DNA of 64,000 bases from the IMG/VR virus record IMGVR_UViG_3300022602_000024, positions 290,430 to 354,429 of that record. One strand, 5' to 3'. A program made the translations under genes and the position numbers. Positions 4,253-29,665 of this stretch are shown in pieces. Under the pieces are notes generated by a model that saw nothing but the letters and a program-made list of their open reading frames with translations, did not search any database and was not told the DNA's origin. Each line of letters starts with the position of its first letter. Within the stretch, counting starts at the first letter, position 1.

Positions 4253-5139
4253 AGCGTCTCCAGTATTGCACCAGCAATGGCAGCAGTATCAAAATTGTTG
4301 TTGCAAGGAGTGTTTCCTTTTTTGCAAATCAATCTACTAACTGGACGTTGCTGAATGTCATTACATCCTGCACAATCTTCTAAAGTCTGTATAGCCACTG
4401 CGTTTTTACCATCTTCCCAATTTCGGATTGGCACAATGACTTCAGGACGTAGATGTGTTAGTAATGCAATGATATGTGTATCACTTGCAGCCGCACACCA
4501 ATAAGGACCCGAATCAACCCCAGCAAATGCTCGTGCACCATCACACAGCACTTTTATCTGTTGGTTATTAAACCGGGCTCTTGCGTCAACAAACAAAGGA
4601 TGATCAACAAAATGATCAGTCGAGCCACCAACACATACAACCTTAAAGTCGGCTTTTTGTTTAAATACTTGAGCATATACATCTAACCACACATCCATAG
4701 TAATATTCTTAGCAGTCCAATGCCAATTACGCATATGAACCACAATGTATTGATCTAACTCATTTTGTCGTTGAAACTCAGCAACTGCAGCTTGATCTTC
4801 ATTAGATGGGAATAATTCTACTCCGTGATTTAGCGAATTAACACCAAACGCACGATACATATAATTCTTTTGATAATGTTGCGTAGGATTAAGTTCGTAT
4901 GCATTATCCAAGTTGATGTATATGTCCCAACCTGCTACATTGGGAATTTGATCCACTGGGAAAATGTTTCTAATATGCGGGTTGTTGCGATATACTTCAG
5001 CAAAGTCTGTAGCCACGTCAATATTTGCGTTGGATCCATATTTTAGTTTTAATTCTCTTACTACTGCGGTGCTCATGATAACATCGCCAATGGCCGCACG
5101 ACGTTGCACTAATATGTTAATTGGTTGTTCTAATTTCAT
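4249..5139 (-). CDS. glycosyltransferase family 9 (heptosyltransferase-like)
   Basis: RRAAIGDVIM and GVDSGP motifs; C-terminal Cys cluster. Confidence 0.85.
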   Translation of the reverse strand: MKLEQPINILVQRRAAIGDVIMSTAVVRELKLKYGSNANIDVATDFAEVYRNNPHIRNIFPVDQIPNVAGWDIYINLDNAYELNPTQHYQKNYMYRAFGVNSLNHGVELFPSNEDQAAVAEFQRQNELDQYIVVHMRNWHWTAKNITMDVWLDVYAQVFKQKADFKVVCVGGSTDHFVDHPLFVDARARFNNQQIKVLCDGARAFAGVDSGPYWCAAASDTHIIALLTHLRPEVIVPIRNWEDGKNAVAIQTLEDCAGCNDIQQRPVSRLICKKGNTPCNNNFDTAAIAGAILETL

Positions 5140-22936: not shown

Positions 22937-22975
22937 ATACGTCTATTATACTATCTTTTTTATTCTGCGTCAAGT

Positions 22976-27619: not shown

Positions 27620-27706
27620 TGGTGGATGAGGTTGGACTTGAACCAACAATGCCATTACGACGGAAGATTTACAGTCTCCTGGGGTTACCAATTTTCCTAC
27701 ACATCC
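27620..27706 (-). tRNA. tRNA-Tyr(GUA)
   Basis: Cloverleaf, long variable arm, GTA anticodon, CCA. Confidence 0.94.
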
Positions 27707-27716
27707 ATAACTAACT

Positions 27717-27792
27717 TGGTACATCGTACGAGATTCGAACTCGTGTACCCGCCGTGAAAGGGCGGTGTCCTAGGCCTCTAGACGAACGATGC
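27717..27792 (-). tRNA. tRNA-Glu(UUC)
   Basis: Cloverleaf, TTC anticodon, CCA. Confidence 0.96.
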
Positions 27793-27797
27793 ATATT

Positions 27798-27925
27798 TGG
27801 CGCTCTACAGGATTCTCACCTGCTCACTGAAGACCCCTATAGCGGGGTTTTTATCTCTCTACTGCCATGAGTTGCGAACTCACCGTAGAACCCGAGTTGC
27901 GAACTCGGCGTGGAAATATCAGAGC
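27798..27925 (-). ncRNA. tRNA-like ncRNA (128 nt) with a T-arm and GCCA end but a non-tRNA interior
   Basis: GCTCT/AGAGC acceptor-like stem, GCAGG-TGAGAAT-CCTGT arm, two GAGTTCGCAACTC hairpins. Confidence 0.7.
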
Positions 27926-27932
27926 ATAAACT

Positions 27933-28007
27933 TGGCGGTCCCAAGGAGAATCGAACTCCTATCAACGGCGTGACAAGCCGCTATACTAACCATTATACTA
28001 TGAGACC
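27933..28007 (-). tRNA. tRNA-Asp(GUC)
   Basis: Cloverleaf, GTC anticodon, CCA. Confidence 0.95.
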
Positions 28008-28010
28008 AAA

Positions 28011-28268
28011 ACTATATTAAAATATACTACAGGAATACATGTATTGTATTTAAAGACATCTCTTCTCTTACGCAACACACACATTACAGTCAGAATAGTC
28101 CACCTCGCCGCGATCTTTTTCGCGTTTCCCTTTGCTTGTTACGGCCTAGGTATACGTGCATTGTAACTGTACAACCCTGTGATGTCTCACATATTATGGA
28201 CGAAACCGGACGTCGATAGCTGTACAGTACCTAGTGGTCTGATAACCTGCAGTACATTTTAATATAGT
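28011..28268 (-). ncRNA. unassigned ~258-nt structured ncRNA
   Basis: 23-bp closing stem with 2 G-U pairs on the minus strand; nested helices and a potential pseudoknot. Confidence 0.7.
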
Positions 28269-28343
28269 ATGTGGGCATCGAGTGCTTTTGTTTAATAGTA
28301 AGGGCATCTCCCTTACTACCCACAATACTATATTAAATTTAAC

Positions 28344-28374
28344 TTTTTAAAGAACAAGTGTTAATTTCTTAACA
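28344..28374 (-). promoter_or_regulatory. boxB-like hairpin plus boxA (Nus antitermination site)
   Basis: TGTTAA-GAAA-TTAACA hairpin, then TGTTCTTTAAAAA, just after a promoter. Confidence 0.65.
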
Positions 28375-28381
28375 TGTATGT

Positions 28382-28410
28382 ATTGTAGCACTAGTTGAAT
28401 TAAGTGCCAA
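28382..28410 (-). promoter_or_regulatory. sigma70-type promoter for the ncRNA/tRNA array
   Basis: TTGGCA-17nt-TACAAT with TG extension. Confidence 0.65.
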
Positions 28411-28432: not shown

Positions 28433-28541
28433 CTGTATCTTAAAGCATATTGGTGTCATACACATATTCAATATGTGTATTGCCCCGTCAAGGTTTATCA
28501 ATCCTCCGGCTTTGTTTCGTCCAATATGCTTTAAGATACAG
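28433..28541 (-). ncRNA. unassigned structured RNA with a perfect 21-bp closing stem
   Basis: CTGTATCTTAAAGCATATTGG inverted repeat enclosing two hairpins. Confidence 0.55.
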
Positions 28542-28678
28542 AGTGTTGCCACTCTGCAGATAGGATCGTGTCCTACCCAGGAGTCTTAGTAACTGGTTAC
28601 CGCCCAGCTTTCATGTATCCTGTCCGCCCGTTCGTGCTTTTTTAAGTGAGCACAGGACCTCGTTCCCTGTAACACTTT
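28539..28678 (-). ncRNA. unassigned multi-hairpin GC-rich RNA
   Basis: CCTGT/ACAGG, CTGG/CCAG, GTAGGA/TCCTAT and CAGAGTG-GCAA-CACTCTG stems. Confidence 0.5.
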
Positions 28679-28682
28679 AGTA

Positions 28683-28844
28683 TTAACGTTTGTGCGTATC
28701 TAACTTTCTAGCCATTTCAGCCAAGGCTCGTAGATGAGCTTCTGCACGTTGTACCTTATCTTCCATCAACTTCATTCTCTGCTCTGGTGTTAAAATCAAA
28801 CCAGGAACAAATTGTTGATGAGTTTGCTTTTGTTCTAACATCAT
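28683..28844 (-). CDS. small helical protein (53 aa, MMLEQKQTHQQFVPG...), first gene after the attenuator; not in ORF track
   Basis: Manual translation; AAGGA RBS. Confidence 0.65.
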   Translation of the reverse strand: MMLEQKQTHQQFVPGLILTPEQRMKLMEDKVQRAEAHLRALAEMARKLDTHKR

Positions 28845-29087: not shown

Positions 29088-29216
29088 TTAAATGACTTCG
29101 TATTCGTCTTTACCGCAACCACATTCGGGACACAAAAAGTCCTCGGCTAGATCTTCCCATTTGCCTTCTAAGATTTCATCGTGGACATGTCCACAAACTA
29201 CGCATACGTGATCCAT
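29088..29216 (-). CDS. rubredoxin (42 aa); not in ORF track
   Basis: MDHVCVVCGHV...WEDLAEDFLCPECGCGK; TAATG coupling to rubrerythrin. Confidence 0.92.
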   Translation of the reverse strand: MDHVCVVCGHVHDEILEGKWEDLAEDFLCPECGCGKDEYEVI

Positions 29217-29665
29217 TATAGTGCCTCCAATTTTGCTTGATATGCTTCAGCATGACGCTTTTCAATTTTGGCCAATGCTGCAAAACGCTTTTCTGCTTTG
29301 GCTAGAATAGCCGCAAATTGTTCTGCGTGCTCTTTGCTTTCGGCGATTTGCTCGGCGGCTTCGTAAGCCGCTGCAGTATTGCCTTCATCTTCAGCTTGTG
29401 CTTTGAATTCAGGATACATTGTAGTGAATTCATAAACTTCGCCTTCAATGGCTTTTTGCAAACATTCAGCAGTACTGGGCTTGCCAATCAGCAATTCTAA
29501 ATGCCCCCAAGCGTGTAACAACTCTTGATTAGCAGTATGCTCAAAATGTTGTGCAATATCTTCGTGACCCTCTTCTCGGGCAATTTTTGCAAAATAACGG
29601 TATTTTGTGTGAGCCTGTGACTCGCCAGCAAATGCCGCTTCTAAGTTTTTAATAGTAATGCTCAT
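29216..29665 (-). CDS. rubrerythrin
   Basis: NLEAAFAGESQA, E..H, EGE.YE...MYP.F, E..H di-iron motifs. Confidence 0.95.
   Translation of the reverse strand: MSITIKNLEAAFAGESQAHTKYRYFAKIAREEGHEDIAQHFEHTANQELLHAWGHLELLIGKPSTAECLQKAIEGEVYEFTTMYPEFKAQAEDEGNTAAAYEAAEQIAESKEHAEQFAAILAKAEKRFAALAKIEKRHAEAYQAKLEAL

What the first reader, a model, noticed from the sequence alone, without database searches (positions are those of the whole stretch)
28344..28410. rrn-style boxB/boxA antitermination site leading the tRNA array
Seen: a promoter, then a GAAA-tetraloop hairpin, then TGTTCTTTAAAAA. Established: rrn leaders use boxB-boxA (TGCTCTTTAACA) to load NusB/E/G/A and SuhB and protect untranslated RNA from Rho. 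Inference: the phage borrows host rRNA antitermination for its long noncoding operon. This second promoter also bypasses the attenuator, so control may be two-tiered.
Basis: partly seen in the sequence, partly recalled or inferred. Interest (0 to 1): 0.6.

Follow-up and report, generated by a model that had tools for sequence, protein, structure and literature searches.

The report
rRNA-style boxA leader on phage tRNAs
A freshwater T4-like jumbo phage starts one of its tRNA/non-coding RNA units with the same promoter–hairpin–boxA leader that bacteria use on their ribosomal RNA operons, and the same leader recurs at tRNA arrays of many uncultured phages, so phages probably recruit the host's rRNA transcription machinery for their tRNAs.

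Summary
On the minus strand lie a sigma-70-type promoter (TTGGCA-17-TGcTACAAT, 28410-28382), a 6-bp hairpin with a GAAA loop (28374-28359), a 2-nt linker, then TGTTCTTTAAAAA (28356-28344).

Within this 354-kb genome alone the boxA match is no better than chance. Comparison changes the verdict. In relatives whose intergenic DNA is otherwise unalignable, the same module recurs: promoter, short GNRA-capped hairpin with covarying stem, then [T/C]GTTCTTTAAAA, directly ahead of tRNA arrays.

In loci fetched without reference to boxA, the published functional consensus GYTCTTTAANA occurs in 14 of 503 tRNA-cluster leaders on the sense strand. That compares with 1 antisense and 0.95 expected. It occurs in 13 of the 23 promoter-led leaders long enough to hold it.

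The site is 12/13 identical to the E. coli 16S-23S spacer boxA, and its layout matches the E. coli rrn P2 leader. Phage leaders with Bacteroidota-type promoters carry the Bacteroidota rrn spacer 16-mer.

Nus-factor loading is therefore the best explanation (about 0.6), but it is untested, and the host is unknown.

The operon is mixed tRNA and protein genes, not purely non-coding. The upstream "attenuator" is part of a conserved structured RNA with no U tract.

The parts
28405..28410 (-). -35 hexamer TTGGCA of the promoter
   Evidence: Consensus scan, 10/12 with 17-nt spacer. A sigma-70-type promoter sits at the same place after the conserved structured RNA in L008, L012 and L039. Metagenome variants change only spacer bases 28393 and 28396.
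28382..28390 (-). extended -10 element TGcTACAAT; predicted start of transcription about A28375
   Evidence: The start site is inferred from the usual 7-nt distance and has not been mapped.
28359..28374 (-). 5'-proximal hairpin TGTTAA-GAAA-TTAACA (6 bp, GNRA loop); candidate boxB equivalent or 5'-end protecting stem-loop
   Evidence: Fold -3.0 kcal/mol. In 11 leaders, 4 of 6 pairs show changes on both sides, 92% of cells are paired, and 0 of 500 shuffles reach this. Loops are GAAA, GCAA or GAGA. A GNRA hairpin ends 1-6 nt before boxA in 12 of 38 promoter-linked sites and in 0 of 80 other sites.
28344..28356 (-). boxA-like element TGTTCTTTAAAAA (core GYTCTTTAANA = 28355-28345), preceded by linker CT 28358-28357
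   Evidence: Perfect match to the functional consensus of PMC5725501. It is 12/13 identical to the E. coli spacer boxA TGCTCTTTAAAAA. It recurs in relatives and is enriched in tRNA leaders. It is the only hit of the module's covariance model in the whole genome.
28336..28343 (-). GTTAAATT, a 3' extension of the motif
   Evidence: It is identical in the window, L086/L090 and L091, although their flanks differ. Its function is unknown.
28251..28344 (-). long A/U-rich hairpin (arms 28344-28325 and 28270-28251) with an inner 9-bp stem-loop
   Evidence: Fold -33.4 kcal/mol, z -5.0; inverted repeat I4. Metagenome variants lack exactly its interior, 28272-28335.
28011..28268 (-). 23-bp long-range stem (28268-28246 with 28033-28011) around a 212-nt structured RNA; it shares one arm with the hairpin above
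   Evidence: Inverted repeat I1. The stem is present in the minimum-energy fold of the 369-nt leader, z -5.3. L086 has the same layout. A variant lacks or replaces the interior, 28036-28242.
27620..28007 (-). tRNA-Asp (27933-28007), tRNA-Glu (27717-27792), tRNA-Tyr (27620-27706): the first tRNAs of the unit
   Evidence: ARAGORN and Rfam.
   Evidence: Invariant AACGAGG and ACGGGCGG. P1 and P2 covary in 10 sequences. There is no Rfam match and no U tract after the stem.

Best explanation
The site is the leader of a host-RNA-polymerase transcription unit of a T4-like freshwater jumbo phage, built like a bacterial rrn P2 leader. Transcription starts about A28375. The first 16 nt fold into a small GNRA-capped hairpin. 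Two bases later the nascent RNA shows the boxA sequence UGUUCUUUAAAAA.

Inferred mechanism: host NusB-NusE(S10) bind this boxA and, with NusA, NusG and SuhB-type factors, convert RNA polymerase into an rrn-type antitermination complex. That complex carries it through about 760 nt of untranslated, highly structured RNA (a stem-enclosed 212-nt RNA, then tRNA-Asp, Glu and Tyr) and on into a mixed tRNA/protein operon. It would resist Rho, and may also help long-range helices form for processing, as it does in rRNA operons.

Shown here: the sequence elements, their conservation and covariation, their strand-specific association with promoter-led tRNA leaders, and their identity with rrn boxA.

Inferred, not shown: the start site, Nus binding, the effect on termination or folding, and the role of the hairpin.
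For: Sequence:
- The site is a perfect match to GYTCTTTAANA, the consensus derived from functional E. coli boxA elements.
- It is 12/13 identical to the E. coli 16S-23S spacer boxA, which recurs about 2 kb after each leader boxA in all 7 rrn operons.

Architecture: E. coli rrnH P2 runs -10, 10 nt, hairpin, 2-3 nt, boxA. The phage runs -10, 7 nt, hairpin, 2 nt, boxA.

Conservation:
- The module recurs in relatives with 30-80% protein identity and no alignable intergenic DNA.
- The distance from the -10 to the motif varies from 6 to 41 nt, and the distance to the tRNA from 4 to about 420 nt. This fits an element read on the RNA, not a promoter part.

Unbiased enrichment:
- 14 of 503 leaders carry the consensus on the sense strand, against 1 antisense and 0.95 expected.
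- 13 of 23 promoter-led leaders of 31-70 nt carry it.
- 33 of 36 promoter-linked sites have same-strand tRNAs downstream.

Hairpin: the stem covaries and the loop stays GNRA.

Host tracking: a phage leader with a Bacteroidota-type promoter (L196) carries GTTCTTTGACATATTG. This 16-mer lies in the 16S-23S spacer of 6 of 8 Bacteroidota loci checked.

The phage has no NusB or NusG gene of its own and uses many strong sigma-70-type promoters.

boxA is necessary and sufficient for rrnTAC formation (PMC10250234).
Against: - No experiment or read data bear on function. The one RNA run held only contigs from relatives.
- The host is unknown, so the match to its own rrn boxA is untested.
- In this genome the 11-mer occurs 8 times against about 3 expected, and the other 7 copies show no such promoter-hairpin-tRNA context. 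Sequence alone is therefore not diagnostic.
- Only one of the phage's promoter-led tRNA units has the element. tRNA-Met (30038) and the Asn cluster (22936) start 8-10 nt after their -10.
- No C-rich, G-poor rut-like stretch and no intrinsic terminator stand out downstream, so a need for antitermination is not evident.
- The hairpin is weak, and in the fold of the full leader the boxA region pairs otherwise.
- The leaders counted are partly related by descent, so the P-values overstate independence.
Confidence: 0.6

Rival explanations
1. RNA stability and processing leader, independent of Nus factors. The 5'-terminal hairpin protects the transcript from 5'-end-dependent decay. The A/U-rich single-stranded tract is an entry or cleavage site for RNase E/G, or a spacer for RNase P, during tRNA maturation. 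The likeness to boxA would be convergent.
For: - The hairpin starts 0-3 nt from the predicted 5' end in most leaders. By established knowledge of E. coli mRNA decay, that is the geometry that stabilises RNA.
- In many leaders the motif ends 14-19 nt before the tRNA.
- GNRA loops are a common way to cap short weak stems.
Against: - An 11-nt sequence kept identical to rrn boxA across unrelated leaders is more than an A/U-rich tract needs.
- The Bacteroidota-type leaders carry the Bacteroidota rrn 16-mer rather than a generic A/U tract.
- Distance to the tRNA ranges from 4 to about 420 nt.
Confidence: 0.17
2. Phage-specific, lambda-N-like antitermination. A small phage protein binds the conserved GNRA hairpin and, together with boxA-bound host Nus factors, makes a phage-only termination-resistant complex.
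For: - The hairpin loop is always GNRA and the stem covaries. Lambda N recognises a GNRA-like boxB loop (PMC10250234).
- The 14-nt hairpin is identical in the window and at a second promoter of L086, despite different flanks.
- In rrn operons boxB has no known partner.
Against: - The order is hairpin then boxA, as in rrn, not boxA then boxB as in nut sites.
- Many leaders have boxA without any hairpin (types c and d: L091, L032, L044, L175).
- No candidate protein was identified, and N-like proteins cannot be found by homology.
Confidence: 0.1
3. DNA-level operator. The palindrome and the A/T-rich tract are binding sites for a repressor or nucleoid protein that controls the promoter.
For: The palindrome overlaps +1 to +16, a usual operator position. 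Its sequence is well kept between the window, L194 and L086.
Against: - Stem sequences change with compensation while the loop is kept. That is the signature of RNA, not of a half-site operator.
- The motif is strand-specific, 14 sense against 1 antisense.
- It sits at variable distances from the promoter.
Confidence: 0.06
4. Chance resemblance in A/T-rich intergenic DNA, with no function.
For: Within the genome the match is at chance frequency, and in its 37-nt context the hairpin is no better than shuffles (z -0.12).
Against: Recurrence, covariation, strand bias and enrichment in independently fetched loci.
Confidence: 0.04

Closest known systems
E. coli rrn operon leader (P2 - boxB - boxA - boxC) and 16S-23S spacer boxA; rrn antitermination complex (NusA, B, E, G, SuhB, S4)
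   Same: - Host sigma-70 promoter, then a hairpin starting 7-10 nt after the -10, then boxA 2-3 nt after the hairpin.
- The 13-mer is 12/13 identical to the spacer boxA and 11/13 to the leader boxA.
- It is followed by untranslated structured RNA enclosed by long-range helices and by tRNAs, as rRNAs are enclosed by leader-trailer helices.
   Different: - It leads a phage unit of a small unknown RNA plus tRNAs and then protein genes, not rRNA.
- The hairpin is a minimal 5-8-bp stem with a GNRA loop, not the longer rrn boxB.
- No conserved boxC. TGTGGG follows in the window but not in L086.
- Nus dependence is untested.
Lambda nutL/nutR sites (boxA - boxB, N protein plus host Nus factors)
   Same: A phage transcript carries a boxA next to a small hairpin with a GNRA-type loop. 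It presumably uses host Nus factors to modify host RNA polymerase.
   Different: - The order is reversed: the hairpin comes first.
- The boxA is of the full rrn type.
- No N-like protein is known here.
- The target is a tRNA/non-coding unit of a T4-like lytic phage (gp23 capsid protein).
boxA elements outside rrn operons, e.g. the suhB 5' UTR (Baniulyte et al. 2017, PMC5725501)
   Same: A perfect GYTCTTTAANA close to a promoter in a 5' leader, found by the same kind of consensus search.
   Different: Those elements precede protein genes and repress them. This one precedes RNA genes. That survey explicitly left out non-coding RNAs, and it does not discuss tRNA genes.
Phage T4 tRNA operon with two small stable RNAs of unknown function (from general knowledge, not tested here)
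   Same: A T4-type phage that co-transcribes tRNAs with small structured RNAs from host-type promoters.
   Different: To my knowledge no boxA leader has been described for T4. I did not examine T4 itself.

Membership tests
rrn-type boxA (NusB-NusE loading site) | RNA sequence matching the functional boxA consensus GYTCTTTAANA | tested here: met
   GTTCTTTAAAA at 28355-28345 is a perfect match. The 13-mer is 12/13 identical to the E. coli spacer boxA.
rrn-type boxA (NusB-NusE loading site) | Lies on the transcribed strand, shortly after a promoter, in an untranslated leader | tested here: met
   It begins 25 nt after the -10 of a 10/12 promoter with an extended -10. No ORF of 60 aa or more starts before the tRNAs. 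The promoter is predicted, not mapped.
rrn-type boxA (NusB-NusE loading site) | Kept by selection in related genomes | tested here: met
   It recurs in relatives with diverged flanks. Enrichment is 14 against 0.95 expected, with 1 antisense. 13 of 23 long promoter-led tRNA leaders carry it.
rrn-type boxA (NusB-NusE loading site) | boxB hairpin just upstream, in the rrn order boxB-boxA | tested here: met
   The hairpin at 28374-28359 ends 2 nt before boxA and covaries. The order and linker match E. coli rrnH. In rrn operons boxB is not required for function.
rrn-type boxA (NusB-NusE loading site) | boxC (GU-rich) downstream of boxA | tested here: inconclusive
   TGTGGG lies 19 nt after boxA in the window (28324-28319), but L086 has nothing similar.
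rrn-type boxA (NusB-NusE loading site) | Same sequence as the boxA of the host's own rrn operons | not testable with these tools
   The host is unknown. The 20-mer scan of genomes gave 4 chance hits, and no handle for sampling Proteobacteria could be obtained. The principle holds for Bacteroidota-type phage leaders.
rrn-type boxA (NusB-NusE loading site) | Binds NusB-NusE and makes RNA polymerase resistant to Rho | not testable with these tools
   This needs binding and reporter assays.
lambda-type nut site | Order boxA then boxB | tested here: not met
   The hairpin precedes boxA in every leader that has one.
lambda-type nut site | Phage N-type protein that binds the boxB loop | not testable with these tools
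   N-like proteins are short and have no detectable homology. None was sought beyond NusB and NusG scans, which found nothing.
intrinsic terminator / attenuator (the upstream stem 28541-28433) | G+C-rich stem followed by a U tract | tested here: not met
   The stem is A/U-rich and is followed by GTTGCATAAAAAC. The terminator scan does not list it. It is the covarying distal helix of a conserved RNA.

The most novel reading that the evidence does not exclude
Phage tRNA arrays are commonly built as pseudo-rrn operons. They would have a promoter-proximal boxB/boxA leader copied from the host lineage's rRNA operons, and in some phages long-range stems around extra structured RNAs. The host rrn antitermination/chaperone complex would then transcribe and fold them. 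If so, the boxA variant and its flanks track the host lineage and could serve as a host-prediction marker for uncultured phages. The conserved GNRA hairpin might be the handle for a still unknown phage factor.
Probability: 0.35. Interest if true: 0.75.

Novelty: new member of a known kind. Interest (0 to 1): 0.6.

Why it matters
The boxA/Nus system is known from rRNA operons, lambdoid nut sites and a few cellular genes. I found no paper in the searched library that describes it at phage tRNA arrays.

If the reading is right, it would explain how large lytic phages get long untranslated RNA units transcribed by host polymerase in the face of Rho. It would add a class of Nus-factor targets. It would also give a simple sequence marker, the boxA variant plus its flanks, that links uncultured phages to host lineages.

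It is directly testable with standard reporter and binding assays.

Tried and rejected
- **BLAST to cultured phages.** The 0.8-1.5-kb region matched only tRNAs.
- **Rfam.** Scans of the region at permissive thresholds gave only chance microRNA-like hits.
- **Chance from the genome alone.** The own-genome statistics pointed to chance. Comparative data overturned this.
- **The motif as a second promoter** (TTAACA-17-TAAATT). Rejected, because in L091 the tRNA starts right after TAAATT.
- **TTTAATATAG as a phage-wide promoter motif.** Rejected; it occurs only in this locus.
- **Scan of 185,579 genomes for the 20-mer GTTCTTTAAAAAGTTAAATT.** It gave 4 hits, all in Bacteroidota, with no rRNA or promoter-and-tRNA-leader context at the site (one locus holds a tRNA 6 kb away). 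These are chance hits, so no host was found.
- **Sampling Proteobacteria through an E. coli record.** This gave only a record handle without relatives.
- **Covariance model R1 of the module.** It finds only close variants, and only this one site in the genome.
- **NusB and NusG genes in the phage.** None found.
- **RNA evidence.** The one metatranscriptome held 5% of the words, as contigs of relatives. It gives no start site or expression level.
- **Rut-like C>G scan.** Nothing clear.
- **Alignment A1/A2 identity of boxA (0.99).** Circular, because those rows were chosen by the motif. It is not used as evidence.

Full report
**What the window is.** The window is bases 290430-354429 of a 354,429-bp IMG/VR virus record with 40% G+C, estimated 98% complete. 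The record encodes a T4-type gp23 capsid protein at 328 bits. It carries 54 near-consensus sigma-70-type promoter matches, 46 of them on the gene-rich minus strand. It also has TATAAATA motifs biased to that strand. I therefore read it as a T4-like jumbo phage whose early genes are read by host RNA polymerase.

Near-identical DNA occurs in freshwater and lake metagenomes of about 20 studies. No cultured phage matches the region beyond its tRNAs. All 21 tRNA genes of the genome lie in the window on the minus strand. They are interleaved with genes for methyltransferases, a nitronate-monooxygenase-like protein, a glycosyltransferase and others.

**The observation.** Read on the minus strand, the site has these parts:
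- TTGGCA at 28410-28405
- a 17-nt spacer ending in TG
- TACAAT at 28387-28382
- seven bases
- the hairpin TGTTAA-GAAA-TTAACA at 28374-28359
- a CT linker
- TGTTCTTTAAAAA at 28356-28344

The promoter scores 10/12 with an extended -10. The hairpin is worth -3.0 kcal/mol.

**Chance within this genome.** The boxA likeness is not remarkable in this genome alone. There are 22 sites within two mismatches of the E. coli leader boxA, against 19.2 +/- 4.7 simulated. There are eight perfect matches to GYTCTTTAANA against about three expected. The other seven show no promoter-hairpin-tRNA context like this one.

**Relatives.** A neighbouring rubrerythrin gene (29216-29665) brought in 80 related IMG/VR loci. 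Beyond a small conserved ORF, their intergenic DNA does not align with the window, except in a 99% identical fragment (L006) and partly in L008. My first impression was therefore 'not conserved'.

A pattern scan with the motif plus its 3' flank then found it in L086/L090 and L091. These contigs share proteins at 30-68% identity with this phage.
- In L086 a promoter is followed by the hairpin AGTTAG-GAAA-TTAACT and then CGTTCTTTAAAAAGTTAAATT.
- In L091 a promoter is followed by the motif and then directly by a nine-tRNA array.

Searching all held loci showed the same module in many rubrerythrin-clade loci. It sits in front of tRNA-Gln, tRNA-Glu or tRNA-Leu, with hairpins ATTGA-GAAA-TCAAT, ACTAA-GCAA-TTAGT and others.

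**Unbiased tests.** I fetched a further 119 phage loci with a tRNA-Glu pattern that says nothing about boxA. Across the 199 loci obtained without reference to the motif (1.88 Mb):
- 503 distinct 100-nt windows precede the first tRNA of a cluster.
- GYTCTTTAANA occurs in 14 of them on the sense strand and 1 on the antisense strand, with 0.95 expected from its overall frequency. A looser core gave 19 against 2.
- Of 62 such leaders with a promoter of at least 10/12, 39 have 30 nt or fewer between the -10 and the tRNA, and none of these has the motif.
- The other 23 have 31-70 nt, and 13 of them carry the perfect consensus.
- Of 36 promoter-linked motif sites, 33 have same-strand tRNAs downstream, often arrays of 8-12.

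The leaders are partly related by descent, so the P-values (about 1e-12) are too optimistic. Even so, at least ten leader types with unrelated flanks carry the motif.

The distance from the -10 to the motif ranges from 6 to 41 nt, and the distance from the motif to the tRNA from 4 to about 420 nt. This speaks for an element read on the RNA rather than a promoter part or a fixed processing site.

**The hairpin.** In an alignment of 11 leaders:
- four of six pairs change on both sides
- 92% of cells pair
- no shuffle of 500 reaches the observed covariation
- sliding the partner by one to three columns drops pairing to 9-36%

The loops are GAAA, GCAA or GAGA. A GNRA hairpin ends 1-6 nt before the motif in 12 of 38 promoter-linked sites and in none of 80 other motif sites.

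So this is an RNA hairpin. But several leaders have boxA without it, so it is not obligatory. It begins 0-3 nt from the predicted 5' end, which also fits a protective 5' stem-loop.

**Comparison with real rrn operons.** The E. coli rrnH leader reads: -10 TAATAT, ten bases, a hairpin, two to three bases, TGCTCTTTAACAA. That is the same order and nearly the same spacing as in the phage.

A pattern search of an E. coli chromosome shows seven pairs of boxA about 2 kb apart. The leader copy is GCTCTTTAACA and the spacer copy GCTCTTTAAAA. The spacer 13-mer TGCTCTTTAAAAA differs from the phage site at one base, the Y of the consensus.

The consensus GYTCTTTAANA was derived from functional E. coli elements (PMC5725501). 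boxA is reported as necessary and sufficient for assembly of the rrn antitermination complex, while boxB has no known partner there (PMC10250234).

**Host-lineage tracking.** A phage leader with a Bacteroidota-type promoter (L196) carries GTTCTTTGACATATTG, and L114 carries a close variant. That 16-mer is present in 8 of 81 sampled Bacteroidota genomes, while the reversed control pattern hit once. In 6 of 8 loci checked it lies between the spacer tRNAs and the 23S rRNA. So, at least in that lineage, phage tRNA leaders copy the host-type rrn boxA with its flanks.

For the window's own phage I could not do this test. The host is unknown, the one genome-collection scan gave only chance hits, and I could not obtain a handle to sample Proteobacteria. 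Strong TTGACA/TATAAT promoters and Shine-Dalgarno sequences argue against a Bacteroidota host.

**What the leader leads.** After boxA come:
- an A/U-rich hairpin (28344-28251)
- a 23-bp long-range stem (28268-28246 with 28033-28011) around 212 nt of structured RNA
- tRNA-Asp, a 140-nt spacer, tRNA-Glu and tRNA-Tyr

L086 has the same plan, with two stem-enclosed RNAs before tRNA-Asp. Metagenome contigs of related strains lack or replace exactly the interiors of these stems, yet keep the arms, the hairpin and boxA. Their only change inside the module is a one-base deletion in the linker. In the promoter only spacer bases vary.

No intrinsic terminator is predicted on this strand before the next strong promoter at 22973. 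The unit may therefore run on through two methyltransferase genes, four tRNAs, a nitronate-monooxygenase-like gene, tRNA-Ala and a glycosyltransferase gene. It is thus not a purely non-coding operon. Other tRNA clusters of this phage have leaderless promoters or follow protein genes. The module occurs once in the genome. It heads the longest untranslated stretch, which fits an anti-Rho or folding role, but no rut-like stretch is evident.

**The 'attenuator'.** The 21-bp stem upstream (28541-28433) belongs to a conserved structured RNA of about 250 nt. That RNA has invariant AACGAGG and ACGGGCGG, two covarying hairpins and a covarying distal stem. It is present in at least ten relatives and usually lies next to tRNAs. 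It has no Rfam match and no U tract. I see no basis for attenuation or two-tiered control.

**Verdict.** Function through host Nus factors is the best explanation (about 0.6), since the phage has no NusB or NusG of its own. It remains an inference.

The rivals, in order of weight, are:
- a Nus-independent stability or processing leader
- an N-like phage factor acting on the hairpin
- a DNA operator
- chance

I found no description of boxA leaders at phage tRNA arrays in the searched literature. I therefore file the site as a new member of the boxA family in a new context, with a possibly general rule behind it.

Noticed in passing
window 28433-28685 (minus strand); L008:6992-7190, L012:7551-7735, L028:4805, L039:7211-7400, L081:8181, L086:11952, L133:439 (minus), L189:7967, L199:12484 (minus): A conserved structured RNA of about 200-250 nt with invariant AACGAGG (hairpin loop) and ACGGGCGG, two covarying hairpins (8 of 10 pairs with double changes) and a long covarying distal stem. 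It has no Rfam match and usually lies directly beside tRNA genes. It may be an undescribed phage RNA family.
   Followed up: partly
window 28011-28344 (minus strand); L086:12936-13346: Long A/U-rich stems (20-23 bp) enclose variable structured RNAs between boxA and tRNA-Asp, with two alternative pairings that share one arm. Related strains in metagenomes lack or replace exactly the interiors (28272-28335 and 28036-28242). This resembles rRNA leader-trailer processing stems. The enclosed 212-nt RNA is unidentified.
   Followed up: partly
whole genome, e.g. window 120, 3270, 16615, and genome positions 243081, 228480, 153596 (minus strand): Many consensus TTGACA-17-TATAAT promoters (46 on the minus strand, 8 on the plus strand at 11/12 or better). 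Several have an ATG only 6-8 nt after the -10, which suggests leaderless early mRNAs.
   Followed up: no
whole genome; in the window 27448, 21883, 39774, 52517, 54980 (minus strand): TATAAATA, the T4 late-promoter motif, occurs 20 times on the minus strand and 5 on the plus strand. Several copies lie just before a Shine-Dalgarno sequence and ATG. Together with the gp23-type capsid gene at genome 14474-15424, this points to T4-type late transcription.
   Followed up: partly
L196 (minus strand, leader of tRNA-Asp) and L114:10935; Bacteroidota loci L217, L219-L223 position 1501-1516: A phage tRNA leader with a Bacteroidota-type promoter (L196) carries the same 16-mer, GTTCTTTGACATATTG, that lies in the 16S-23S spacer of Bacteroidota genomes; L114 carries a close variant. 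Leader boxA variants may tell the host lineage.
   Followed up: partly
phage records H86-H110 (e.g. T5-like MF431736.1 4709-4727 in the left terminal repeat; Escherichia phage LL11 251-271; Kayfunavirus 4436-4457): Stretches of 19-22 nt identical to the E. coli rrn leader boxA and its flank occur in early regions of T5-like, SP6-like and T7-like coliphages.
   Followed up: no
L012:7790-7878 and L039:7446-7530: Between the promoter and tRNA-Asp, relatives carry a tRNA-like gene with a GTA anticodon loop, a long extra arm and an encoded CCA. ARAGORN did not call it. The window has the stem-enclosed RNAs at this position instead.
   Followed up: no
window 27793-27932 (minus strand): The spacer between tRNA-Asp and tRNA-Glu holds two copies of a T-arm-like hairpin (GAGTTCGCAACTC) and a CCCC/GGGG hairpin. 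These may be remnants of decayed tRNA genes.
   Followed up: no
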